A DNA stretch of 64,000 bases, taken from contig CATNEN010000039.1 of the NCBI GenBank assembly GCA_950097015.1, positions 11,036,001 to 11,100,000 of the forward strand, in the 5' to 3' direction. The translations under genes were made by a program, and so were the position numbers. The notes below the pieces were generated by a model that was not told where the DNA came from, searched no databases, and saw only the letters and a list, made by a program, of their open reading frames with translations. This stretch comes from Macrostomum hystrix. Its lineage: Eukaryota > Animalia > Platyhelminthes. Shown piece after piece: positions 1 to 29,357 of the stretch (the stretch's first letter is position 1; every line of letters starts with the position of its first letter).

Positions 1-2505
1 TCGCAGCAAGATCCATATCTAGAATCGCAGCAAGATCCATATCTAGAATCGCAGCAAGATCCATATCTAGAATCGCAGCAAGATCCATATCTAGAATCGC
101 AGCAAGATCCATATCTAGAATCGCAGCAAGATCCATATCTAGAATCGCAGCAAGATCCATATCTAGAATCGCAGCAAGATCCATATCTAGAATCGCAGCA
201 AGATCCATATCTAGAATCGCAGCAAGATCCATATCTAGAATCGCAGCAAGATCTATATCTAGAATCGCAGCAAGATCTATATCTAGAATCGCAGCAAGAT
301 CCATATCTAGAATCGCAGCAAGATCCATATCTAGAATCGCAGCAAGATCTATATCTAGAATCGCAGCAAGATCCATATCTAGAATCGCAGCAAGATATAT
401 ATCTAGAATCGCAGCAAGATCTATATCTAGAAACGCAGCAAGATCTATATCTAGAATCGCAGCAAGATCCATATCTAGAATCGCAGCAAGATCCATATCT
501 AGAATCGCAGCAAGATCCATATCTAGAATCGCAGCAAGATCCATATCTAGAATCGCAGCAAGATCCATATCTAGAATCGCAGCAAGATCCATATCTAGAA
601 TCGCAGCAAGATCCATATCTAGAATCGCAGCAAGATCCATATCTAGAATCGCAGCAAGATCTATATCTAGAATCGCAGCAAGATCCATATCTAGAATCGC
701 AGCAAGATCCATATCTAGAATCGCAGCAAGATCCATATCTAGAATCGCAGCAAGATCCATATCTAGAATCGCAGCAAGATCCATATCTAGAATCGCAGCA
801 AGATCCATATCTAGAATCGCAGCAAGATCCATATCTAGAATCGCAGCAAGATCCATATCTAGAATCGCAGCAAGATCTATATCTAGAATCGCAGCAAGAT
901 CTATATCTAGAATCGCAGCAAGATCCATATCTAGAATCGCAGCAAGATCCATATCTAGAATCGCAGCAAGATCTATATCTAGAATCGCAGCAAGATCCAT
1001 ATCTAGAATCGCAGCAAGATATATATCTAGAATCGCAGCAAGATCTATATCTAGAAACGCAGCAAGATCTATATCTAGAATCGCAGCAAGATCCATATCT
1101 AGAATCGCAGCAAGATCCATATCTAGAATCGCAGCAAGATCCATATCTAGAATCGCAGCAAGATCCATATCTAGAATCGCAGCAAGATCCATATCTAGAA
1201 TCGCAGCAAGATCCATATCTAGAATCGCAGCAAGATCCATATCTAGAATCGCAGCAAGATCCATATCTAGAATCGCAGCAAGATCCATATCTAGAATCGC
1301 AGCATGATTCATATCTAGAATCGCAGCAAGATCCATATCTAGAATCGCAGCAAGATCCATATCTAGAATCGCAGCAAGATCCATATCTAGAATCGCAGCA
1401 AGATCTATATCTAGAATCGCAGCAAGATCCATATCTAGAATCGCAGCAAGATCTATATCTAGAATCGCAGCAAGATCTATATCTAGAATCGCAGCAAGAT
1501 CTATATCTAGAAACGCAGCAAGATCTATATCTAGAATCGCAGCAAGATCCATATCTAGAATCGCAGCAAGATCCATATCTAGAATCGCAGCAAGATCCAT
1601 ATCTAGATTCGCAGCAAGATCCATATCTAGAATCGCAGCAAGATCCATATCTAGAATTGCAGCAAGATCCATATCTAGAATCGCAGCATGATTCATATCT
1701 AGAATCGCAGCAAGATCCATATCTAGAATCGCAGCAAGATCCATATCTAGAATCGCAGCAAGATCCATATCTAGAATCGCAGCAAGATCTATATCTAGAA
1801 TCGCAGCAAGATCCATATCTAGAATCGCAGCAAGATCTATATCTAGAATCGCAGCAAGATCTATATCTAGAAACGCAGCAAGATCTATATCTAGAATCGC
1901 AGCAAGATCCATATCTAGAATCGCAGCAAGATCCATATCTAGAATCGCAGCAAGATCCATATCTAGATTCGCAGCAAGATCCATATCTAGAATCGCAGCA
2001 AGATCCATATCTAGAATTGCAGCAAGATCTATATCTAGAATCGCAGCAAGATCCATATCTAGAATCGCAGCAAGATCTATATCTAGAATCGCAGCAAGAT
2101 CCATATCTAGAATCGCAGCAAGATCCATATCTAGAATCGCAGCAAGATCCATATCTAGATTCGCAGCAAGATCCATATCTAGAATCGCAGCAAGATCCAT
2201 ATCTAGAATTGCAGCAAGATCCATATCTAGAATCGCAGCAAGATCCATATCTAGCTCGAAGAATCGCAGCAAGATCCATATCTAGCTCGAAGAATCGCAG
2301 CAAGATCCATATCTAGCTCGAAGAATCGCAGCAAGATCCATATCTAGAATCGCAGCAAGATCCATATCTAGCTCGAAGAATCGCAGCAAGATCCATATCT
2401 AGAATCGAGAATCTAGAATCGCAGCAGGAGTTGAAGCTAGAATCGCAGCAGGAGTTGAAGCTAGAATCGCAGCAGGAGCCCTACTTGCCAACTAGAATCG
2501 CAGCA
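1..2505. repeat. Minisatellite, 24-bp unit TCGCAGCAAGATCCATATCTAGAA (runs off the window start)
   Basis: About 100 tandem copies with point variants, degenerating at the right end. Explains the QQDPYLES ORF. Confidence 0.97.
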
Positions 2506-3052
2506 GATTATTTTTTGCACTCCAACTACTCTACTCATAGCAGCAAATCGCAGTTTATCCAGTGTCCAAGCAATTTTGTTGCAACTTTCCAATTTCAGGA
2601 CTTCATTCTTCTGCTGAATCTTGAAGCCAATTTGATGGCTCAATCTAATTTTCTGAGCCTTTGATTTAAAGATATGCGGTTCAAAAAAACGTTATTAAGG
2701 GGACATTTTTCCCATCACCTCCTATTCCCAGTGACATGAAGCAAATGAGACGGGTTGGAGAATGAACATCAAAGAGGGTTTGAAAGAGTGCCAAGAAAGG
2801 AGACAGCGACAGAGAAAGGCCTCAAAGCTGAGCCGAGACAAAAAGCAAAAGTGAGAAGAAGTGACGGTACACCAGAGTATTGGAAGACAATGCTGCAAGA
2901 AAGGAAAAAATGCGCAGAAAAATGCTGGGATCAAAGAAAAGTATAGTGGGCGAAGTTGAGACTGATGCCTTCATTTACAACCAGTTAGTATGGCTAGGGG
3001 TAAAAACGTTGATATTGTACAAATCTACTTACAAAGATAGAAGGTTAATCAT

Positions 3053-4656: not shown

Positions 4657-5171
4657 CCACATCTGCCGGTGTCGGCGTCATTCGGCGCCGGGGTTGTCGG
4701 CATCACTGGCATCAGCGGCGGCGGAGGCAGCGCCGCGGGCGGCAGCTCCGGTGTCGGCGGCGGTGGCGGCGTCAAGCGGTTTCCAAGCTTTCGAGCGAGG
4801 CTGGTCGGTAGATTCAGCTCGGTTCGACAGCCGCACGGCTTCCACAGGCAGCAGCAGCAGCAGCAGCATCGACTCGGCCATCACCACTCACTAGGCGGCG
4901 GGCCCAGCGAACCGCTGATAAGCTCGATGGAGCCCGGCTGCGAGGCCGCGGGCAGGCGAAGCCAGGATGCGGCAAGCGCAGGCATTGACATAGGGTGCGA
5001 TCAGCAGCAGAGCACCTCCAGCTACCTCAAGGAGCAGTTCTTCGCCTTCTTCCAGCCCTCCGACAATAAGTTGGCCATGAAGCTGTTTGGCAACAAGAAC
5101 GCTTTGCTAAAGGAGAAGCGCCGGCAGCAGCAGTCTGGCAAATGGATCATCCACCCGTGCAGCAACTTCAG
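4657..5171 (+). CDS. HCN: HCN exon: Gly/Gln-rich N-terminus and HCN domain
   Basis: Branch-like CACTAAC at 4641, acceptor TAG ending 4656. Encodes YLKEQFFAFFQPSDNKLAMKLFGNKNALLKEKRRQQQSGKWIIHPCSNFR, typical of invertebrate Ih. Donor AG|GTAAGA at 5172. Confidence 0.9.
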
Positions 5172-5305
5172 GTAAGACGAAGCCGGGCACCATTGGTGGC
5201 GCAGTAACCAAACTTGCCCTAGCAACAGTCTCCGGGCTGCAGTGTGCATGTCAGGAGGTCTAAAAGCAAAAATGGGCCAAAGACAGGCGCCCTCCGAACA
5301 CCTGC

Positions 5306-6215
5306 ATGTCTCATCTCTCCCGTGTCTCATCTCTCCCGTGTCTCATCTCTCCTCTCTCATCTCTCCCGTGTCTCATCTCTCCCGTGTCTCATCTCTCCCA
5401 TGTCTCATCTCTCCCGTGTCTCATATCTCCCGTGTCTCATATCTCCCGAGTCTCATCTCTCCCGTGTCTCATCTCTCCCATGTCTCATCTATCCCGTGTC
5501 TCATATCTCCCGAGTCTCATCTCTCCCCTGTCTCATCTCTCCCGTGTCTCATCTCTCACTTGTCTCATCGCTTTTGTCTCATCTCCCACTGTCTTATCTC
5601 TCCCCTGTCTTATCTCTCCCCTGTCTTATCTCTCCCGTGTCTCATCTCTCCTGTGTCTCATCTCTCCCGAGTCTCATCTCTCCCGTGTCTCATCTCTCCC
5701 ATGTCTCATCTATCCCGTGTCTCATATCTCCCGTGTCTCATCTCTCCCTTGTCTCATCGCTTTTGTCTCATCTCCCACTGTCTTATCTCTCCCCTGTCTT
5801 ATCTCTCCTGTGTCTCATCTCTCCTCTGTCTCCTCTCTCCCCTGTCTCATCTCTCCCCTGTCTCATCTCTCCTGTGTCTCATCTCTCCTGTGTCTCATCT
5901 CTCCTGTGTCTCATCTCTCCCTTGTCTTATCTCTCCTGTGTCTCATCTCTCCTGTGTCTCATCTCTCCCCTGTCTCATCTCTCCCCTGTCTCATCTCTCC
6001 CCTGTCTCATCTCTCCTGTGTCTCATCTCTCCTGTGTCTCATCTCTCCTGTGTCTCATCTCTCCTGTGTCTCATCTCTCCTGTGTCTTATCTCTCCCGTG
6101 TCTCATCTCTCCCCTGTCTCCTCTCTCCCCTGTCTCATCTCTCCCCTGTCTCATCTCTCCTGTGTCTCATCTCTCCTGTGTCTCATCTCTCCTGTGTCTT
6201 ATCTCTCCCGTGTAT
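5306..6215. repeat. Intronic pyrimidine-rich minisatellite, about 16-bp unit TGTCTCATCTCTCCCG
   Basis: Tandem copies inside the HCN intron. ORFs in all three + frames are artefacts. Confidence 0.95.
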
Positions 6216-7002
6216 CAGCTCTCACATGTCTTATCTCTTTCATTGGCTCTCATCTGATCTCGTCACGTTGCCTATTTTATCTTATCTTATCTCTCTTTCT
6301 CCATCTCATCTCAGCATCTCTCCTCTGTAGATCTGATCCCACTGGGATGTTTTAAATCTGGATTTCCTCTTCTGCCCGCAAGGCCTCTTCCCATTCTGAT
6401 GTAAGGAAAGTGCAGCTACTTGGCGCCGCTGCGCTGTTATGTTTATCACGTCTGTCACTTCTCCGTCTCGGATTCGAAGCCCTCGATCCCATTTGGCATC
6501 TCCGCCACAGCGGATAAGCTGACAAGCTGATAAGCCTGATGGCTGACCAACCTGAAGCTGAAGCCAGGTTTATTCCCCAATTTTAGAATTGTCTCGTGTT
6601 CACCTGAAGATTGCAGTCTTTGGATACAAATCGATGGTTAAGCATCATAACTTAGAGATGTCTGTGAGATATATGGGCTAGTGCAAAAACTGCACAAAAT
6701 GTGCCGCAATTATCTTACAATCGAATCCGAATCCCATGTCCCGCGCATTCTTCCTCATCAGAAACTATTCGCAGTTCTGGTCTGTTCCCTTCGATCTCGA
6801 TTCAGCGGTGATTGACAGGGCAGGCGGTTCCGCCGGTTTACAGGCTAAAGCGGGTTTTCACCGCGAAGAAATTGCTAGAGATCACTCAGACCGGTCAGCA
6901 CCGGACAGCTAATCTCAAGCTTGCGAAATCGTCAAGCCTAGCGCGAGGCTTTCCTAGAAACGTCAATTTTCATTTATGAAGAGGAGATTTCGCTGCGCCT
7001 GT

Positions 7003-7265: not shown

Positions 7266-7429
7266 GTTCTACTGGGACCTGCTGATGCTGGTGTTGCTGA
7301 TCACCAACCTGGTGGTGCTGCCCGTCGCCATTTCGTTCTTCAACGACGACCTGAGCGCCCACTGGATAATTTTCAACTGCGTCTCAGACACCATCTTCCT
7401 CAGCGACATTGCAGTGAACTTCCGAACAG
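7266..7429 (+). CDS. HCN: HCN exon: S1-S2
   Basis: CAG acceptor. Encodes (R)FYWDLLMLVLLITNLVVLPVAISFFNDDLSAHWIIFNCVSDTIFLSDIAVNFRT(G). Ends at the non-canonical donor G|GCAAGC. Confidence 0.93.
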
Positions 7430-7742: not shown

Positions 7743-7910
7743 GCGTCATCACGAATGACTTCGCAGAAGAGATCATCCTGGACCCAAAGCTGATCGCGCA
7801 GCACTACCTGAAGTCCTGGTTCTTTCTAGACCTCATCTCTTCCATACCAATGGACTACATCTTTCTGGTGCTCAATCAGAGGAACAATGTCAGCCAGTTG
7901 GTTCACGCAG
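7743..7910 (+). CDS. HCN: HCN exon: S2-S3 loop and S3
   Basis: TTGCAG acceptor. Encodes [55 protein letters not shown]. Donor G|GTGAGA. Not shown in this frame in the ORF track. Confidence 0.93.
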
Positions 7911-7999: not shown

Positions 8000-8097
8000 G
8001 CCGAGCTCTGCGCATTCTGCGGCTGGCGAAGCTTCTCAGCCTGCTGCGCCTGCTGCGCCTCTCGCGATTGGTCCGCTACGTCAGCCAATGGGAGGAG
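8000..8097 (+). CDS. HCN: HCN exon: S4 voltage sensor
   Basis: TTAG acceptor. Encodes [32 protein letters not shown]. Phase-0 donor GAG|GTGAGA. Confidence 0.95.
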
Positions 8098-8229
8098 GTG
8101 AGATAATTTTCTACTTTTAGTAGCTGCATTTTTACTTCTAAAGTGACGCAACAAGAATCTTGTGTCGAGTCCAAGGTACTCCAAACCGTAAACTTCCCCT
8201 CGACTTCCTTATTCCCTATTATTTTACAG

Positions 8230-8379
8230 TTCTTTCAAATAGCCAGCAAATGCTTCGGCATTATAAAGCTGGTGCTGATCATGATGCTCTTGGGCCACTG
8301 GAATGCCTGCTTCCAGTTTCTCATTCCGTTCCTAAGCGAATTCCCGGACGACTCGTGGGTGGCCAGGAGCGGCCTGAAG
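8230..8379 (+). CDS. HCN: HCN alternative S4-S5/S5/turret exon A (150 nt)
   Basis: TTTTACAG acceptor, AAG|GTGATG donor. Encodes FFQIASKCFGIIKLVLIMMLLGHWNACFQFLIPFLSEFPDDSWVARSGLK. Confidence 0.85.
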
Positions 8380-8771
8380 GTGATGCCCGGCTGGGGTCTA
8401 CTGTCGGGTTTCTGTTGCGTTGGCAACTTGCACCAGCTTTGGCCCCTGTGCGTCTCTCGCTTATCAGTGTCAAACCTGTCAGCCTCCGCTAACCAATCGA
8501 TAATCAATCAATAAATAGATCCCTTTAACCTGCGCCCATTGCACCGCAGCTATAATGTGCCTTACCGAGTTCTGTAGCCACGAGCACTCGCCGCACATCC
8601 CGACTCACCGCTCCGTTTCTAGAGAGGCCTTAGTTTTCTGCCTGTTCTGTCTGTGTGGCCAAACAAGAGTTCTTAGAGTTTTTACAGGATTTTTCGTAGA
8701 CGATCATTCAACATGACCAAGTGCCGGACGCTGCTAAATTCCAATCCTAGTCACCTTCCCCACATTTGCAG

Positions 8772-8921
8772 CTCCTGAGTGCAGCCAATAAGTTCATGGG
8801 TATTTTCAACCTGGTCCTCCTGATGCTGCTGTTGGGCCATTGGAATGCCTGCCTGCAGTATCTCATTCCGTTTCTGCAGGACTTTCCCGAGCAATCTTGG
8901 GTTGTCAGGTGCAACTTGAAG
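8772..8921 (+). CDS. HCN: HCN alternative S4-S5/S5/turret exon B (150 nt)
   Basis: TTTGCAG acceptor, AAG|GTGAAG donor. Encodes LLSAANKFMGIFNLVLLMLLLGHWNACLQYLIPFLQDFPEQSWVVRCNLK. Confidence 0.88.
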
Positions 8922-9361
8922 GTGAAGAAAGATAAAAATACACTAATTAATCCGTTTGGCGCATCGAGCGAATCCATTTACTCTGTCTCGGCTCACATTC
9001 ACCTGGCAGCCTTTCCCATTCAAAGCTGTACTTTCTAGAATTATAGATCCCCCAGACGCATTAACTGCTCGATAATTTGCACCGTGTCAAATTTCATCGG
9101 CACAATTGACTGCCAGTTTGTTTGGCTTTGCTGACATACGTTTTTAATTAGAAAGCTGTGCTGATTAAGAGCAGCAATGGTGATTGTTTGCCTGTCTGCA
9201 TGCCGCTGGTCAAGCCCATGAAATCGGAGTCTTCATGAGAAAAATGCATCGACCTCCAGATAGAAAATAAAATGCTTAAGCACGATCTTAAAGCATTCTT
9301 AAAACTTCCTAAAAACTGTTGTATAGTCTCCCTCGAAAAGATTGAAAAATCAATGCCATGG

Positions 9362-9550
9362 GGAATTTCTAGAACCGGCTAGCTGGGAACCCCCAGTGAC
9401 GTCTGCGGAGATCGCACGAATTGGAATTTCTAGAACCGGCTAGCTGGGAACCCCCAGTGACGTCTGCGGAGATCGCACGAATTGGAATTTCTAGAACCGG
9501 CTAGCTGGGAACCCCCAGTGACGTCTGCGGAGATCGCACGAATTTCGTGC
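9362..9550. repeat. 61-bp unit x3 in the intron between exons B and C
   Basis: GGAATTTCTAGAACCGGCTAGCTGGGAACCCCCAGTGACGTCTGCGGAGATCGCACGAATT starts at 9362, 9423 and 9484. Ends in the near-palindrome GCACGAA-T-TTCGTGC. Confidence 0.9.
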
Positions 9551-10398
9551 AATAGTTCTCTTTGGCTAGCGAACTTCGCCAGTCATAAGCATCCGTGAGT
9601 GTCTTCACAATTGTAATCGGAAAGTGAGATCAACGTTAGTGGCCATCGTTGATGGCAATAAAATGCATCGAGATAGTTTGGACGGAAGTGTAGTGACTGT
9701 GGTCGGTTAGGGATCCCCGGCCTACGTTAGGACGCTCACACAGTACTCCTTAGTAAGATGGTGCAGTACAGGCCTGGCACTCCGAAAGGAAAGACACGAA
9801 TGCAGCGCCTACAGGATGATGCAGGTGGCTTCTCTGACAATTTCGGTGTGTCTGATTTCTTTCATGCAATAAATTTAGTCTTTGCAGTAAGATACCGTCT
9901 TTTCGGGCTGGACTGATAAGGTCAAAATAAAAGTCAAGCTAACGGCACGCAGGGAGGGGTAGGGTTGTACGCGCTGGCCGGGTGGATGGGCAGAGCTGAT
10001 TGGCGGGAAGGCCAAAACCACTCGGGCCTGTGGTAAGGGTTGGCAGACAATCCCCGCGCCCAGCCAATCAGGTGGCGGCACAGGGCAGACAGGGCAGGGA
10101 CGGGTAAGAGGGTGAAAGAGGGCGAGGCCAAGGCCGAGCCAACCATACCGGCCTGAAATAACGGCCTTGGCGGGCAGTCAACAATGCCCAACCGCATCCT
10201 GAACACAGGTCTTGCGAAAGTAAAACACGATGTCTTCAATGGCGAGTCAAAATGTTGAGCAGTCATAGTCATAGCTGTTTTAAAACTTTGAGCTTTGAAA
10301 ATAAATTCTTGTTTGTGTGTAAGTTCTCTGTTTGACAATTACCGCTGCAGACGGTCACCGCGATAGTTCCAAAGCGCTTCTTGACTGCCCCCTTTCAG

Positions 10399-10548
10399 TT
10401 GCTGAACGTGGCCTCAGTGTTTATTCGTGTTGTAAACCTGGTCTGTTTGATGCTGCTGCTCGCTCACTGGAACGGCTGCCTGCAGTTCCTCGTGCCAGCC
10501 ATTCAAGACTTCCCCAAAGACTCCTGGGTTAGGAAGCTGAACATCCAG
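10399..10548 (+). CDS. HCN: HCN alternative S4-S5/S5/turret exon C (150 nt, most canonical)
   Basis: CCTTTCAG acceptor, CAG|GTACCT donor. Encodes LLNVASVFIRVVNLVCLMLLLAHWNGCLQFLVPAIQDFPKDSWVRKLNIQ. Confidence 0.9.
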
Positions 10549-10742: not shown

Positions 10743-11064
10743 CAGTAAGAACTACCATGCGACGGTATTTTTGAAAAAAATAACAGGTAGTATTTTTGAA
10801 AAAAATATACAATTTAATCAATCCAAAATAGTTACCAATGACAGCCAAGATGAAATTTTGTGAGCAGAAAAATTATACCTATATTTTATTCGTTGAATAT
10901 CTCGACGATGCCGATGTTTTGTGATTCCGGAAGTTGTTTCATCGAATAGAGCGGAAAATTTTAGCCCGTGTTCATGATTTTCATGGTGATTGGTTGGATA
11001 TTTTGGGAGATACAGAATAAGAAAAATGTGGGTAGTTAAAACAGCCCCCGTGGTCTTTCTACTG
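10743..11064. mobile_element. MITE / non-autonomous DNA element flanked by TTAA
   Basis: TTAA|CAGTAAGAACTACCATG ... CGTGGTCTTTCTACTG|TTAA imperfect terminal inverted repeats. Related copy at 13381-13608. Confidence 0.7.
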
Positions 11065-11248
11065 TTAAAGCAGAGTCAACTTGAATAGCTGAGCCCTGTA
11101 CTTTATTAGCTTTATACTATTAGCAAAGCTGCATGCTGCAATCGTGCTCGGTAACTATTCCTTGTCGCCTTGCTTTTTGCCTTTTAGCTTCCTTTGCCCT
11201 GCACCTCAAACTAAAAAACCGCGTTGTTGTCTTAATGGTTAATAGAGA

Positions 11249-11543
11249 CAGCTCATACATGCAAGATTCACAGCTCAGACATGCCAGATTCACAGCTCAG
11301 ACATGCAAGATTCACAGCTCAGACATGCAAGATTCACAGCTCAGACATGCAAGATTCACAGCTCAGACATGCAAGATTCACAGCTCAGACATGCAAGATT
11401 CACAGCTCATACATGCCAGATTCACAGCTCAGACATGCAAGATTCACAGCTCAGACATGCAAGATTCACAGCTCAGACATGCCAGATTCACAGCTCAGAC
11501 ATGCAAGATTCACAGCTCAGACATGCAAGATTCACAGCTCAGA
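11249..11543. repeat. Intronic minisatellite, 22-bp unit GATTCACAGCTCAGACATGCAA
   Basis: About 13 copies, ending about 20 nt before the pore-exon acceptor. Confidence 0.95.
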
Positions 11544-11564: not shown

Positions 11565-11783
11565 GAGGCGCATTGGTTCCGCCAGTACACGTGGGCCCTG
11601 TTCAAAGCCATGAGCCACATGCTGAGCATCGGGTACGGCCAGCACCCGCCAACCAGCATCAGCGAAGCCTGGATCACCATCGTCAGCATGATGACCGGCT
11701 CGTCCTGCTACGCGCTATTCGTTGGCCACGCAGCCGCCCTCATCCAGAGCTTCGACACATCGAAGCGACTCTACCGAGAGAAG
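11565..11783 (+). CDS. HCN: HCN exon: pore helix, selectivity filter (SIGYG), S6, start of C-linker
   Basis: CCGCAG acceptor. Encodes [73 protein letters not shown]. Donor AAG|GTAGTA. Confidence 0.95.
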
Positions 11784-12603: not shown

Positions 12604-12750
12604 TTCAAGCAGGTGGAGGAGTACATGGCCTACAGGAAGCTTCCCAGAGCACTCAGGCAGCGGATAGCGAATTACTACGAGCACCGATATCAGGGCAAGA
12701 TGTTCAACGAGGGCGACATTCTGAGCGAACTGTCCGAATGTCTCCGAGAG
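12604..12750 (+). CDS. HCN: HCN exon: C-linker
   Basis: Encodes [52 protein letters not shown] acceptor, GAG|GTGAGG donor. Confidence 0.95.
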
Positions 12751-13751: not shown

Positions 13752-13995
13752 CAAATCATCAACTATAACTGCCGCGCCCTGGTGGCGGCCGTTCCGTTCT
13801 TTACCTACGCCGACCAGGACTTCGTGTCCGAGGTGGTCACCCGTCTGAAGTACGAGGTGTTTCAACCAGGAGATCTCATCATCAAGGAAGGAACCATCGG
13901 CACCAAGATGTACTTCATCCAGGAGGGCATAGTAGATATCATCACCAAGGATGGCGAGGTTGCTACCAGCTTGTCTGACGGCTCCTACTTTGGTG
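13752..13995 (+). CDS. HCN: HCN exon: cyclic-nucleotide-binding domain, part 1
   Basis: Encodes [81 protein letters not shown]. Donor G|GTAAGG. Confidence 0.95.
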
Positions 13996-15730: not shown

Positions 15731-16191
15731 AGATCTGCCTGCTCACCAACGCCCGTCGCGTCGCCAGCGTCCGAGCCGAGACCTACTGCAACCTGTACTC
15801 ACTGGAGCGGGAGAACTTCCTCTCGGTGCTGGACAATTACCCCCTGATGCGCCGCACCATGGAGTCCGTGGCGGCCGAGCGGCTGAGCAAGATCGGCCAG
15901 AACCCGCAGCTCGTAAGCAACCGGGCGGACCTGAAGGAGGACCTCAACTTGGTCAAGGAGATTGTCAACCAGGCTGCGACGCCACTTCATCCGGACGAGG
16001 AGGAGCATTTCCTGCTGGACGCCTCTCCGTCGGATGAGGCGGCCGGTCAGCAGCTGCCGCCGGCGTCCCCGCAGGCGTCTGGCGGCGACTCGCGGCGCAA
16101 GTCGGTGGTCAAGCTCGGCTTGCAGCGCCTCGGCTTGGTCCGGCCGAAGCTCCCCAGCCCGTCCGATGGACCCGACGAGTCCGCGGTGTGA
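15731..16191 (+). CDS. HCN: HCN last exon: phosphate-binding cassette, C-helix, C-terminus ending ESAV
   Basis: ACGCAG acceptor. Encodes (E)ICLLTNARRVASVRAETYCNLYSL.... Stop TGA at 16189-16191. AATAAA at 16368. Confidence 0.95.
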
Positions 16192-25877: not shown

Positions 25878-26666
25878 GCGGAAACCTCTAATTCTCATCC
25901 CAACCCCCGAGTCTTCATTGCGGAAGCCTCTCATTCTCATCCCAACCCCCGAGTCTTCATTGCGGAAGCCTCTCATTCTCATCCCAACCCCCGAGTCTTC
26001 ATTGCGGAAGCCTCTCATTCTCATCCCAACCCCCGAGTCTTCATTGCGGAAGCCTCTCATTCTCATCCCAACCCCCGAGTCTTCATTGCGGAAGCCTCTC
26101 ATTCTCATCCCAACCCCCGAGTCTTCATTGCGGAAGCCTCTCATTCTCATCCCAACCCCCGAGTCTTCATTGCGGAAGCCTCTCATTCTCATCCCAACCC
26201 CCGAGTCTTCATTGCGGAAGCCTCTCATTCTCATCCCAACCCCCGAGTCTTCATTGCGGAAGCCTCTCATTCTCATCCCAACCCCGAATCTTCAGGGCGG
26301 AAGCCTCTCATTCTCATCCCAACCCCGAATCTTCAGGGCGGGAACCTCTAATTCTCATCCCAACCCCCGAGTCTTCATTGCGGAAACCTCTAATTCTCAT
26401 CCCAACCCCCGAGTCTTCATTGCGGAAGCCTCTCATTCTCATCCCAACCCCGAATCTTCAGGGCGGAAGCCTCTCATTCTCATCCCAACCCCGAATCTTC
26501 AGGGCGGAAACCTCTAATTCTCATCCCAACCCCGAATCTTCAGGGCGGAAACCTCTAATTCTCATCCCAACCCCGAATCTTCAGGGCGGGAACCTCTAAT
26601 TCTCATCCCAACCCCGAATCTTCAGGGCGGAAACCTCTCATTCTCATCCCAACCCCGAATCTTCAG
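25878..26666. repeat. 41/42-bp minisatellite filling Gab intron 2
   Basis: Units GCGGAAGCCTCTCATTCTCATCCCAACCCCCGAGTCTTCATT and ...CCCCGAATCTTCAGG. Confidence 0.95.
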
Positions 26667-27134
26667 GTACTGAATCCTCCACTTCCTCTGTAATTTTGAC
26701 AACTTCTCGTCAATCCACCGCAGCAGGTCTGACATTCGCTCAGACTCAGCATCAGAGGCAGCAGCCACCGCAGCGACCTCTGAATCTGCCGAAAACGATT
26801 GCAACAACTAACAACGTCGGCAACGGCAATGGCCCCCCGGCGCACCCAGACAGAGACAGCGGGGTGTACAAGTCGCCGGCCGAGCTGACCGCGGACTCTC
26901 TAGCCGAAGATGTGTACCGGGTGCCAAGTCTTGGCGATCCCGCCGACCCGGTCTACGGCGTGCCGGATGCCGCATATCATGACAGGCCAGCCGAAGAGGA
27001 CGCGTATGGCCAGCCGGTGCCATTGTCAGCCGAGCAGCAGCAGCAGCAGGATCCAGATGCCGCCAATGCGGCGCCTCCCAGACCGCCGCCAAGAAAGTCG
27101 GTCAAACCTGCCCCAGATTCACAGGCCGACGTTG
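26667..27134 (+). CDS. Gab: Gab/DOS exon 3 (YxxP motifs, proline-rich SH3 ligand)
   Basis: In frame after TCTTCAG. Contains YKSP, YRVP, YGVP, YGQP and PPRPPPRK. Donor G|GTAAGT. Confidence 0.8.
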
Positions 27135-27155
27135 GTAAGTTTTTTCCCCGGACCG

Positions 27156-27820
27156 TGATCCCGAACCCTGATCCCGAACTCTGATCCCGAAACCTGATCC
27201 CGAAACCTGATCCCGAAACCTGATCCCGAAACCTGATCCCGAACTCTCATCCCGAAACCTGATCCCCAATCCTGATCCTGAACCCTGATCCCAAACCTTG
27301 ATCCCGAAACCTGATCCCGAACCTTGATCCCGAACTCAGATCCCGAACCTTGATCCCGAACCTTGATCCTGAACCCTGATCCCAAACCTTGATCCCGAAA
27401 CCTGATCCCGAACCTTGATCCCGAACTCAGATCCCGAACCTTGATCCCGAACCTTGATCCCGAACACTGATCCCGAAACCTGATCCCGAACCCTGATCTC
27501 GAACCTTGATCCCGAACTCAGATCCCGAAACCTGATCGCCAAACCTGATCCCGAAATCTGATCCCCAAACCTGATCCCGAAACCTGATCCCGAACTCTCA
27601 TCCCGAAACCTGATCCTGAACCCTGATCCCGAACACTGATCCTGAACCCTGATCCCGAACCTTGATCCCGAACCTTGATCCCGAACACTGATCTCGAATC
27701 CTGATCCCGAACTCAGATCCCGAAACCTGTTCCTTAAAATCAGATCCCTTAAACCTGATCTGAAATCCTTAACCCAAAATCTGATCCCAAACCCGAAAAC
27801 TGATCCCGAATTCTGATCCT
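27156..27820. repeat. Intronic 12/13-bp minisatellite CTGATCCCGAAAC
   Basis: Degenerate tandem copies starting about 20 nt after the donor. Confidence 0.92.
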
Positions 27821-28278
27821 TCAAACCTTCATCCCCAACAAGATACCCACCCGAAAGCCTAACTCGCATAGAAAAGGGGGTCAGTCGTTATCTATGAAAT
27901 CAGTGCATTTTACTAAAAATAGCTTGCCCGGATCCAACATTGCCTTGAACGACGATAGCAGCCGGAATAAGAATTCAGATTTGGTATATTCCAAAACAAG
28001 CCGTCTAGTTTATTAGTTTTTGCCTGAAAACCAGCACATTCGCTTTGTTTCTGTTATCATTTTTATTGTTCCTGTCACATCTTGTATGCAGTCACTGGTA
28101 TTCAGCTTTTTTGTCAACCAGATTGACTAAATTAATCTACCAGGTTGACACATCTACGAGCTAGTTAATCCTTATCGCAGTTTTAATCCTAATCCCGCAT
28201 CAATAATCGAAATCCCGCCATTCCCGTTCTTTAACAAGCCTGTGCACCAAGTTTTATAGATATTTTTATTTTACTAAG

Positions 28279-28560
28279 AACCACCCCAACGCTAATGGAG
28301 CCTTTGGCGAACAAATTGCTGCGGTTCCGCTGGCTCAGCGCTCGGCCCTGTCCCGCATCTTCACCCTGCGAAAAACAGCTCAGCCGCAGCAGCAGCCGCT
28401 GACGTCAGAGTCGCCGCCGCCGATGCCGCTTCCTCGGAGACGGCAGGGAACCAACACGAGCAGCGAGGAGGAGCCGACGTCAGGAGCTGGAGCTACCTCT
28501 GACTCGGAATCTGGAGACTCGAATTCAGGAGATAGCGGCTCTGTTGACAGCGACCTTGCG
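28279..28560 (+). CDS. Gab: Gab/DOS penultimate exon (5' boundary unresolved, 28279 or 28301)
   Basis: Open frame ...SESPPPMPLPRRRQ...SVDSDLA with donor GCG|GTGAGA. Phase with exon 3 fits only a weak GAG acceptor at 28300, or there is an unseen small exon. Confidence 0.6.
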
Positions 28561-28563
28561 GTG

Positions 28564-28990
28564 AGATCCCAGATCCCGATCCCAGATCCCGATCCCAGAT
28601 CCCGATCCCAGATCCCGATCCCAGATCCCGATCCCAGATCCCGATCCCAGATCCCGATCCCAGATCCCGATCCCAGATCCCGATCCCAGATCCCGATCCC
28701 AGATCCCGATCCCAGATCCCGATCCCAGATCCCGATCCCAGATCCCGATCCCAGATCCCGATCCCAGATCCCGATCCCAGATCCCGATCCCAGATCCCGA
28801 TCCCAGATCCCGATCCCAGATCCCGATCCCAGATCCCGATCCCAGATCCCGATCCCAGATCCCGATCCCAGATCCCGATCCCAGATCCCGATCCCAGATC
28901 CCGATCCCAGATCCCGATCCCAGATCCCGATCCCAGATCCCGATCCCAGATCCCGATCCCAGATCCCGATCCCAGATCCCGATCCCGATC
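28564..28990. repeat. Intronic 13-bp minisatellite AGATCCCGATCCC
   Basis: Near-perfect tandem copies beginning within the donor GTGAGATCCC. Confidence 0.95.
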
Positions 28991-29357
28991 CTGAATCTCT
29001 GAACCATCATCCTGTTTTAAAAGTAGAAAACAAGTTATTTATTTGTATTTATACGACTTTTAGATTTAATCGGTCCAGAGTGTCCGCACAGTAAGTTTCT
29101 GCTTTATTAGCAAGGCAGCATGCAAAACTAGCATTTTGCTGGGACAGAATCTAAACACAATGTTTAACTCGCTCACGCAGCTTTCATAACTAACGCTATC
29201 GAGACAGTTTGTTTCAGAGCTCACTAACTCTAAACAACGTTCTTCATTCTAAACAAACATTTGCCGACTGTTTATTATCTTAACGATTAACGCACTAAAG
29301 TAGCGAGTAATGGAATGACAAAAACGTTAACAAGATCCCGACGCATCGTGCCCGCAG

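What the first reader, a model, noticed from the sequence alone, without database searches (positions are those of the whole stretch)
8230..10548. HCN channel with three paralogous, apparently mutually exclusive exons for the S4-S5 linker, S5 and turret
Seen: between the S4 exon (ends ...QWEE, 8097) and the pore exon (11565) lie three exons of exactly 150 nt (8230-8379, 8772-8921, 10399-10548). All are phase 0/0 with AG/GT sites and no stops. They align without gaps (LxHWNxCxQxLxPxxxxFPxxSWV) while the flanking introns show no extended similarity, which suggests purifying selection. Known: an HCN subunit has a single S5 helix, and the S4-S5/S5 region couples the voltage sensor to the gate. Inference: including two exons would duplicate S5 and invert the topology, and including none would delete it, so one exon per mRNA is expected. 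One gene would then make three subunits with different gating-coupling modules, possibly mixed in heterotetramers. I do not know of a triplicated S5 cassette described for an HCN gene, but I could not check the literature.
Basis: partly seen in the sequence, partly recalled or inferred. Interest (0 to 1): 0.92.

Follow-up and report, generated by a model that had tools for sequence, protein, structure and literature searches.

The report
Three alternative S5 exons in HCN
A Macrostomum flatworm pacemaker-channel (HCN) gene holds three interchangeable, selection-maintained copies of the exon for its S5 helix, so one gene can probably make channels with different gating; exon swapping like this is familiar in ion-channel genes, and the same HCN exon is also duplicated in snails, copepods and tube worms.

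Summary
Three 150-nt, phase-0, AG/GT-flanked homologous exons (A 8230-8379, B 8772-8921, C 10399-10548) lie between the S4 exon and the pore exon of an HCN gene.

The same A-B-C array is present in two other ancient paralogues of this genome. Synonymous sites between the copies are saturated, yet omega is 0.05-0.24 for A and B, so all three exons are under purifying selection.

Transcript-derived M. lignano GenBank models join S4 to A to the pore exon, or S4 to C. All annotated neodermatan HCNs carry a B-type exon.

The exons differ at known gating residues. The spHCN R367 position is Gly in A, Gly in B and Arg in C. The N370 position is Lys in A, Asn in B and Asn in C.

One-exon-per-mRNA use is likely but unproven.

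RefSeq isoforms of a copepod and of gastropods already swap a duplicated copy of this same exon, and siboglinid annelids carry a tandem pair. I found no paper describing it.

The scan noted the same cluster earlier on the paralogous pieces of this genome.

Verdict: a real, new member of a known kind, of moderate interest.

The parts
4951..5171 (+). End of the N-terminal coding exon of the HCN gene (HCN-specific Ion_trans_N domain). The exon starts further upstream, with weak similarity from about 4064. Donor is CAG|gtaaga.
   Evidence: Pfam PF08412, E 2e-24; tblastn with M. lignano P0155/P0166; splice site read.
7266..7429 (+). S1-S2 exon (RFYWDLL...NFRTG), with an apparent GC-AG intron donor (CAG|gcaagc).
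   Evidence: Pfam Ion_trans, E 3e-6; 96% identical to M. lignano proteins; boundaries read.
7743..7910 (+). S3 exon.
   Evidence: tblastn; boundaries read.
8000..8097 (+). S4 voltage-sensor exon. It has regularly spaced R/K residues and ends with the QWEE motif. Donor is GAG|gtgaga, phase 0.
   Evidence: The QWE motif is the S4 end that contacts S5 in spHCN.
8230..8379 (+). Alternative exon A (S4-S5 linker, S5, start of turret). Gly at the spHCN R367 position and Lys at the N370 position.
   Evidence: Conserved in paralogues C34 (92% aa) and C11 (72% aa) with omega 0.05-0.24. Spliced S4|A|pore in M. lignano PAA85143.1. Residue mapping.
8772..8921 (+). Alternative exon B (S4-S5 linker, S5, start of turret). 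Gly at the R367 position and Asn at the N370 position. It is the type carried by all annotated neodermatan HCNs.
   Evidence: 86% and 82% aa identity in paralogues, omega 0.05-0.08. Similarity to neodermatan S5.
10399..10548 (+). Alternative exon C (S4-S5 linker, S5, start of turret). It keeps Arg and Asn, is the most conserved of the three, and is closest to the S5 of other animals. It is the only type present in the fourth paralogue.
   Evidence: 100% aa identity in C34 and C11 and 96% in C37, omega about 0-0.02. Spliced S4|C in M. lignano PAA78447.1. Tree.
11565..11783 (+). Pore helix, SIGYG selectivity filter and S6 exon. It contains the Asp equivalent to spHCN D471 (QSFDTS).
12604..12750 (+). 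C-linker exon.
   Evidence: tblastn, 96-98% identical to M. lignano and the paralogues; boundaries read.
13752..13995 (+). First exon of the cyclic-nucleotide-binding domain.
   Evidence: Pfam PF00027, E 8e-9; boundaries read.
15731..16191 (+). Second exon of the cyclic-nucleotide-binding domain plus the C-terminal tail. The open frame runs to a stop after 16188. Whether further 3' exons exist was not determined.
   Evidence: Pfam PF00027.

Best explanation
The window holds one of four HCN (Ih) channel genes of a Macrostomum flatworm.

Between the S4 exon and the pore exon lies a cluster of three tandem-duplicated exons. Each encodes the whole S4-S5 linker, the S5 helix and the start of the turret. 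All three are working coding exons kept by purifying selection.

The most likely use is as alternatives, with each mRNA taking one of them. One gene would then give three subunits identical except for S5.

- Exon C is the ancestral-type, most constrained version. It keeps the S5 Arg (spHCN R367) that pairs with the S6 Asp, and the S5 Asn (N370) that faces the QWE end of S4.
- Exon B lacks the Arg (Gly instead).
- Exon A lacks the Arg and replaces the Asn with Lys.

[quoted passage not shown] The isoforms are therefore predicted to differ in voltage dependence or closed-state stability.

Shown here: the anatomy, the selection, conservation in paralogues and in M. lignano, single-exon splicing of A and of C in transcript-derived M. 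lignano models, and the residue differences.

Inferred: strict mutual exclusivity, use of B in Macrostomum, the gating consequences, and heteromer mixing.
For: Anatomy and splice sites.

Gene identity: Pfam Ion_trans_N, Ion_trans and cNMP_binding on separate exons. The exon profile matches HCN1 and HCN4 S5 in solved structures.

Paralogues: the same A-B-C order occurs at C34 and C11 of this genome, with exact 150-nt length, open frames and AG/GT sites in all nine exons.

Selection between paralogues:
- dS is above 1 (saturated)
- omega A 0.05-0.24
- omega B 0.05-0.08
- omega C 0-0.02
- omega of constitutive exons 0.01-0.03

Introns between paralogues do not align. The only shared block is an 84-nt dispersed repeat with at least 1610 candidate copies.

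M. lignano transcript evidence: PAA85143.1 reads QWEE|A|EAHWF, skipping B and C. PAA78447.1 reads QWEE|C, skipping A and B. The GenBank annotation of that assembly was built from a genome-guided transcriptome.

Precedent elsewhere: Tigriopus isoforms X2 and X3 are both 1180 aa, and two Biomphalaria isoforms are both 1243 aa. In each pair the isoforms use one or the other of two tandem S5 exons.

Residue mapping onto spHCN R367, N370 and D471 and their described roles.

The same structural positions (HWN.C.Q.L.P, FP..SWV) are conserved in all three exons. This fits substitution in one structural slot.
Against:
- No transcript evidence for exon B in Macrostomum.
- UniProt/MetaClust M. lignano models join A+B+C or A+B in series. 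Biomphalaria XP_055882957.1 (1293 aa) has both of its exons. Routine co-inclusion is therefore not excluded.
- Each exon is 150 nt and in frame, so nonsense-mediated decay (NMD) would not remove double or triple inclusion.
- The A-B and B-C introns are 392 and 1477 nt and all are GT-AG, so neither steric hindrance nor spliceosome incompatibility applies.
- I found no docking/selector RNA pairing above shuffled controls.
- A and B evolve faster than C, which could also mean minor or relaxed use.
Confidence: 0.72

Rival explanations
1. Exon C is effectively constitutive. A and B are rarely or never included leftovers of old duplications, or are included only in unproductive transcripts.
For: C is 100% identical in protein across three paralogues and is the only type in the fourth. 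A and B are 72-92% identical. No transcript evidence for B in Macrostomum.
Against: At saturated dS, A and B keep open frames, exact length and splice sites in all three paralogues, with omega 0.05-0.24. A is the exon used in the transcript-derived M. lignano model PAA85143.1. The B type is the S5 of every annotated neodermatan HCN.
Confidence: 0.1
2. The exons are alternative but not strictly exclusive. Besides single-exon mRNAs, the gene also makes double, triple or skipped forms, which would give non-conducting or dominant-negative subunits.
For: All combinations stay in frame (150 nt each). No enforcing mechanism was found. RefSeq has a both-exon Biomphalaria isoform next to the single-exon ones.
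Against: Two S5 helices would put the pore loop on the wrong side of the membrane. The both-exon models may be gene-predictor products. The only transcript-derived Macrostomum models show a single exon.
Confidence: 0.1
3. All three exons are included together, giving a channel with three helices between S4 and the pore. An odd number of helices keeps the topology, as in the UniProt M. lignano models.
For: M. lignano models P0165, P0166 and relatives read QWEE|A|B|C|EAHWF. Three helices preserve the in/out topology.
Against: - The middle copy would sit inverted in the membrane, yet it keeps the same conserved positions as its homologues.
- PAA85143.1 has A alone.
- The fourth paralogue and every other HCN examined function with one S5.
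- Copepod and snail RefSeq isoforms of equal length swap the exons.
Confidence: 0.06
4. Assembly artefact: a collapsed or expanded repeat created false exon copies.
For: The window is rich in tandem repeats.
Against: The three exons differ by 31-45% in nucleotides. The same array is present at two other diverged loci and in M. lignano proteins from independent assemblies.
Confidence: 0.01

Closest known systems
Tandem S5-exon pairs in other protostome HCN genes: Tigriopus californicus LOC131879150 isoforms X2/X3, Biomphalaria glabrata HCN4-like isoforms, and the tandem pairs in Ridgeia and Lamellibrachia
   Same: The same exon with the same boundaries (after ...QWEE, before the pore exon; about 50 codons, phase 0) is duplicated in tandem. 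In the copepod and the snails, RefSeq isoforms of equal length contain one copy or the other.
   Different: Those are pairs, not triplets. In the exon tree they look like separate, lineage-specific duplications. Both copies keep the S5 Arg and Asn. The flatworm A and B exons replace them. I found them only as database annotations, not in a paper.
Mutually exclusive tandem-duplicated exons in other voltage-gated-like channel genes, for example Lymnaea Cav3 exons 12a/12b (PMC9694082) and human tandem duplicated exon substitutions (PMC9741552)
   Same: Homologous, equal-length adjacent exons substitute one transmembrane or loop module and tune channel properties (abstracts seen).
   Different: A different channel family and module. 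Here the swapped module is the S4-S5 linker plus S5 of a non-domain-swapped, hyperpolarization-activated channel. Exclusivity is not yet shown by RNA.
Drosophila Ih (DmIh) splice variants (Gisselmann et al. 2005, as summarised in PMC4382183 and PMC3344876)
   Same: A single invertebrate HCN gene diversified by alternative splicing, giving at least 12 isoforms.
   Different: [quoted passage not shown] Every insect protein among the listed hits carried the same S5 type.
Docking-site/selector RNA pairing that enforces mutually exclusive splicing (Dscam1, 14-3-3xi; PMC4691838, PMC6071210)
   Same: A cluster of three or more homologous alternative exons with long introns, which is the situation in which such pairing is the known solution.
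   Different: No candidate docking/selector helices exceeded shuffled controls in this locus or its two paralogues. No intron sequence is conserved between the paralogues.

Membership tests
[quoted passage not shown] | HCN-type N-terminal domain (Ion_trans_N) before S1 | tested here: met
   PF08412, E 2e-24, on window:4951-5172.
[quoted passage not shown] | Six-helix voltage-gated-like core with a long, regularly charged S4 ending in QWE, and a GYG pore | tested here: met
   Ion_trans hits on the S1-S2 and pore exons. S4 with spaced R/K residues and QWEE, and SIGYG in the pore exon, read directly. Best solved matches are HCN1, HCN3 and HCN4.
[quoted passage not shown] | C-linker plus cyclic-nucleotide-binding domain | tested here: met
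   PF00027 on two exons. C-linker exon is 96-98% identical to M. lignano HCN.
[quoted passage not shown] | Opens on hyperpolarization and is modulated by cAMP | not testable with these tools
   Needs electrophysiology of expressed isoforms.
Cluster of mutually exclusive exons derived from tandem exon duplication | Adjacent homologous exons of equal length and phase with intact splice sites | tested here: met
   3 x 150 nt, phase 0/0, AG/GT, 42-60% aa identity.
Cluster of mutually exclusive exons derived from tandem exon duplication | Each copy maintained by purifying selection | tested here: met
   Omega 0.05-0.24 (A), 0.05-0.08 (B) and 0-0.02 (C) between paralogues at saturated dS. Introns are unalignable.
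Cluster of mutually exclusive exons derived from tandem exon duplication | Exactly one exon of the cluster in each mature mRNA | tested here: inconclusive
   Transcript-derived M. lignano models show A alone and S4>C. Other database models co-include the exons. No reads could be laid. The short-fragment search found no Macrostomum transcripts.
Cluster of mutually exclusive exons derived from tandem exon duplication | A mechanism that enforces exclusivity (steric hindrance, U2/U12 incompatibility, NMD of double inclusion, or competing RNA pairing) | tested here: not met
   The A-B and B-C introns are 392 and 1477 nt. All sites are GT-AG. 150-nt exons keep the frame. No helices above shuffles. 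Protein-factor control cannot be tested here.

The most novel reading that the evidence does not exclude
The S5 exon of HCN may be a recurrent target of tandem duplication and alternative use across protostomes: flatworms, gastropods, copepods and siboglinid annelids, apparently independently.

In flatworms the B/C split may predate the divergence of Macrostomum from the parasitic Neodermata. The parasites would then have kept only the Arg-less B-type S5, while Macrostomum keeps the ancestral C type, the B type and a further derived A type (Arg lost, Asn replaced by Lys).

That would be a natural series of rewired S4-S5-S6 closed-state locks in a channel whose coupling mechanism is still debated.
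Probability: 0.35. Interest if true: 0.65.

Novelty: new member of a known kind. Interest (0 to 1): 0.5.

Why it matters
How HCN channels couple a conventional voltage sensor to a gate that opens on hyperpolarization is still being worked out. The contacts between the end of S4, S5 and S6 are central to current models (PMC7078272).

Here evolution has built, and kept for a very long time, three versions of exactly that module in one gene. The versions differ at two residues (spHCN R367 and N370) whose roles in stabilising the closed state that paper discusses; N370 was tested there by mutation. Expressing the three isoforms would give a ready-made, naturally validated mutational series.

It also matters for annotation. 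Gene predictors join the three exons in series in public M. lignano proteins, giving wrong channel models.

All annotated HCNs of parasitic flatworms carry the Arg-less B-type S5. This may be relevant if these channels are considered as drug targets.

Tried and rejected
I could not check whether neodermatans have unannotated A- or C-type exons.

2. Short-fragment protein search with the three-exon profile. It returned only single-exon genomic ORFs of other taxa and no Macrostomum transcript fragments.

3. Docking/selector RNA pairing. I ran an inverted-repeat scan, perfect WC/GU helices between all intron pairs in three paralogues against shuffles, and RNAduplex of candidate docking and selector windows against dinucleotide shuffles (best z = -2.0, 2 of 40 shuffles as good). 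Nothing exceeded chance. A first RNAduplex run timed out.

4. Conserved intron elements between paralogues. The only block, 10893-10959, is a dispersed repeat with at least 1610 candidate copies.

5. Relics of A or B in the fourth paralogue (C37). None were found. That intron is filled by a tandem repeat.

6. Literature. Eight full-text searches and eleven paper look-ups (one id not held) found no description of an S5 cassette in any HCN gene. The lobster PIIH paper (Ouyang et al. 2007) and Gisselmann et al. 2005 are not held, so I could not check whether the lobster variants include this exon.

7. Joined model. Exons were searched one by one, and database proteins of M. lignano served as the spliced reference. 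In one search the dN/dS counts of three constitutive exons were pooled. Per-exon values are given there too.
Full report
**What is there.**
- A (8230-8379), B (8772-8921) and C (10399-10548) are each 150 nt and 50 codons, with no stops.
- Each follows a pyrimidine tract ending in AG and is followed by GT.
- The upstream exon ends ...QWEE at 8097 before gtgaga. The next exon starts at 11565 after ccgcag.
- All junctions are phase 0, so any one exon, or any combination, stays in frame.
- The exons align without gaps. A/B share 104/150 nt and 30/50 aa, B/C 95/150 and 28/50, and A/C 83/150 and 21/50. There are 18 invariant columns.
- Identity is highest at codon position 2 and lowest at position 3.
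- The 100 nt on either side are at background identity of 25-38%.

**The gene.**
Searched exon by exon, the surrounding exons hit Ion_trans_N (E 2e-24), Ion_trans (S1-S2 and the pore) and cNMP_binding (two exons).
- A profile of the three exons matches the S5 region of solved HCN1 (residues 290-332) and HCN4 (411-456) at E about 1e-18.
- Exon boundaries were read from the sequence and are listed under parts. The S1-S2 exon appears to use a GC-AG intron.
M. lignano database proteins served as the spliced reference.

**The organism.**
The best full-length relatives are flatworm HCNs, with Macrostomum lignano closest.
- M. lignano P0166 is 92-99% identical to the window over the cluster exons and the downstream core exons, and lower over the N-terminal and C-terminal exons.
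- The window is therefore from a Macrostomum species close to, or the same as, M. lignano.

**The decisive internal control: paralogues.**
A six-frame search of the window's own 220-Mb genome with exon B, followed by tblastn on fetched stretches, shows four HCN loci.
- C39 (this window), C34 and C11 each carry A, B and C in the same order between their S4 and pore exons.
- C37 has only a C-type exon and no relic of A or B.
- All nine cluster exons, plus the single C-type exon of C37, are exactly 150 nt, open, and flanked by AG/GT.
- The gene copies are old. Synonymous divergence is saturated (dS above 1 in every comparison), and the introns do not align at all.
- The only shared intron block is an 84-nt dispersed repeat with at least 1610 candidate copies.

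Against that background:

| Exon | Protein identity between copies | omega |
|---|---|---|
| A | 72-92% | 0.05-0.24 |
| B | 82-86% | 0.05-0.08 |
| C | 96-100% | 0-0.02 |
| Constitutive exons | not computed per exon class | 0.01-0.03 |

A and B are therefore not decaying duplicates.

**Is one exon used per mRNA?**

Indirect evidence comes from M. lignano.
- GenBank protein PAA85143.1 (P0155) reads ...QWEE | A-type exon | EAHWF..., skipping B and C.
- PAA78447.1 (P0017) reads ...QWEE | C-type exon, skipping A and B, and then breaks off.
- The GenBank annotation of that assembly was made from a genome-guided transcriptome (StringTie/TACO plus de novo transcripts; PMC5730564). These two models therefore reflect assembled RNA. 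Linking the PAA accessions to that annotation rests on their Mlig locus-tag format, which is my inference.

Against this:
- UniProt/MetaClust M. lignano models from another annotation string A+B+C or A+B together.
- These are probably gene-predictor products, because all the splice sites are good and in frame, but I could not verify that.
- I found no transcript evidence for B in Macrostomum.

Three would restore the topology, so topology alone does not exclude the A+B+C form.

What argues against the A+B+C form:
- The middle copy would sit upside-down, yet it conserves the same positions as its homologues.
- Every other HCN, including the fourth paralogue, has one S5.

**No enforcing mechanism found.**
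- The A-B and B-C introns are 392 and 1477 nt, so there is no steric hindrance.
- All sites are GT-AG.
- Double inclusion stays in frame, so NMD would not police it.
- Inverted-repeat scans and helix and duplex searches between introns of all three paralogues gave nothing beyond shuffled controls.
- An earlier scan note on a paralogous piece says the exon is "picked as it folds onto itself". My tests do not support that here, though weak or protein-mediated control is not excluded.

**What the exons change.**
I mapped the exons onto sea-urchin spHCN (P0230) and used Ramentol et al. 2020 (PMC7078272).
- In that paper's spHCN model, built on the closed, S4-up hHCN1 structure, E356 of the QWE motif at the end of S4 points at N370 in S5.
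- R367, one turn below, pairs with D471 in S6.

| Position (spHCN) | Exon A | Exon B | Exon C |
|---|---|---|---|
| R367 (exon position 10) | Gly | Gly | Arg |
| N370 (exon position 13) | Lys | Asn | Asn |

- The D471 equivalent is present in the common pore exon.
- C can therefore make the canonical lock. B lacks the Arg-Asp pair. A also lacks it and puts a Lys opposite the acidic end of S4.
- That the isoforms differ in voltage dependence or closed-state stability is a reasoned prediction, not a result.

**Comparison with other animals.**
A profile search of 1.8 billion representatives gave, as its very best hits, short read-through ORFs with two S5 exons in tandem.
- One is from the annelid Lamellibrachia. 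Ridgeia has the same pair.
- RefSeq isoforms of equal length swap two tandem S5 exons in three species:
  - the copepod Tigriopus californicus (XP_059081373.1 and XP_059081374.1, both 1180 aa)
  - the snail Biomphalaria glabrata (XP_055882984.1 and XP_055882978.1, both 1243 aa)
  - a second gastropod
- Biomphalaria also has a both-exon model of 1293 aa.
- Every insect protein among the listed hits carried the same S5 type.
- Published fly Ih variants are described as N-terminal and loop-length differences, not an S5 cassette.

Duplication and alternative use of exactly this exon therefore recurs in protostomes and is already present in annotations. I found no paper that describes it.

**History within flatworms.**
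Every annotated neodermatan HCN (trematodes, cestodes and a monogenean) has a B-type S5 with Gly at position 10.

In a 50-column ML tree:
- A is a tight clade next to Macrostomum B.
- The B types sit with the neodermatan exons.
- C falls with the S5 of all other animals (split support 97/89).

Forcing A+B+C into one clade costs 11 log-likelihood units (AU p = 0.047). This is marginal, and the group was named after the tree had been seen. The result is suggestive only: the B/C pair may predate the split between Macrostomum and Neodermata, with A a later Macrostomum derivative of B.

The gastropod, copepod and annelid pairs look like separate duplications.

**Verdict.**

It is a new member (three exons, flatworm, with changes at coupling residues) of a well-known kind, namely tandem-duplicated alternative exons in ion-channel genes. 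The scan had already noted the same cluster on the paralogous pieces of this genome.

Noticed in passing
window 1-2661: A very long tandem array with a 24-nt unit, open in two frames (SQQDPYLE / AARSISRI repeats), runs off the start of the window.
   Followed up: no
window 5220-6350: Another long repeat, open in all three + frames (LISPVSHLSRVSS-like units), lies in the intron between the N-terminal exon and the S1 exon of the HCN gene.
   Followed up: no
window 9362-9544: Three perfect copies of a 61-nt unit in the B-C intron (TRF score 366).
   Followed up: no
window 11248-11543: 13.5 copies of a 22-nt unit end about 20 nt before the pore-exon acceptor. Each unit can form an 11-bp helix (including 2 G-U pairs) with 8155-8165 in the S4-A intron, but that length is what shuffles give.
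   Followed up: partly
window 10890-10973: An 84-nt dispersed repeat (MITE- or SINE-like) with at least 1610 candidate copies in the genome, 92-96% identical to each other. It also lies in the HCN introns of paralogues C34 and C37.
   Followed up: yes
window 7429/7430: The S1-S2 exon seems to end at a GC donor (CAG|gcaagc), a GC-AG intron. Required by the reading frame relative to M. lignano proteins.
   Followed up: partly
G000:C37:3954001-3956000 (L017/L018, minus strand): The fourth HCN paralogue has only a C-type S5 exon. Its S4-C intron (1147 nt) is almost entirely a tandem repeat that is open in all three frames.
   Followed up: partly
database proteins P0417-P0434 (Mytilus, Mizuhopecten): Bivalve HCN RefSeq isoforms differ just upstream of S5: ...RYVQQWEE versus ...CGRRRRPG. 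This suggests a different alternative event at the end of S4 in bivalves.
   Followed up: no
database proteins P0165, P0166, P0167 and cluster members (M. lignano, UniProt A0A1I8...): Public M. lignano HCN models join A+B+C or A+B in series, giving proteins with two or three S5 helices. These are probably annotation errors caused by the exon cluster.
   Followed up: partly
window 25890-29000: Further coding-looking tandem repeats (FSSQPPSLHCGSLS units and DPRSRSQIPIPDP units) inside long open frames downstream of the HCN gene.
   Followed up: no
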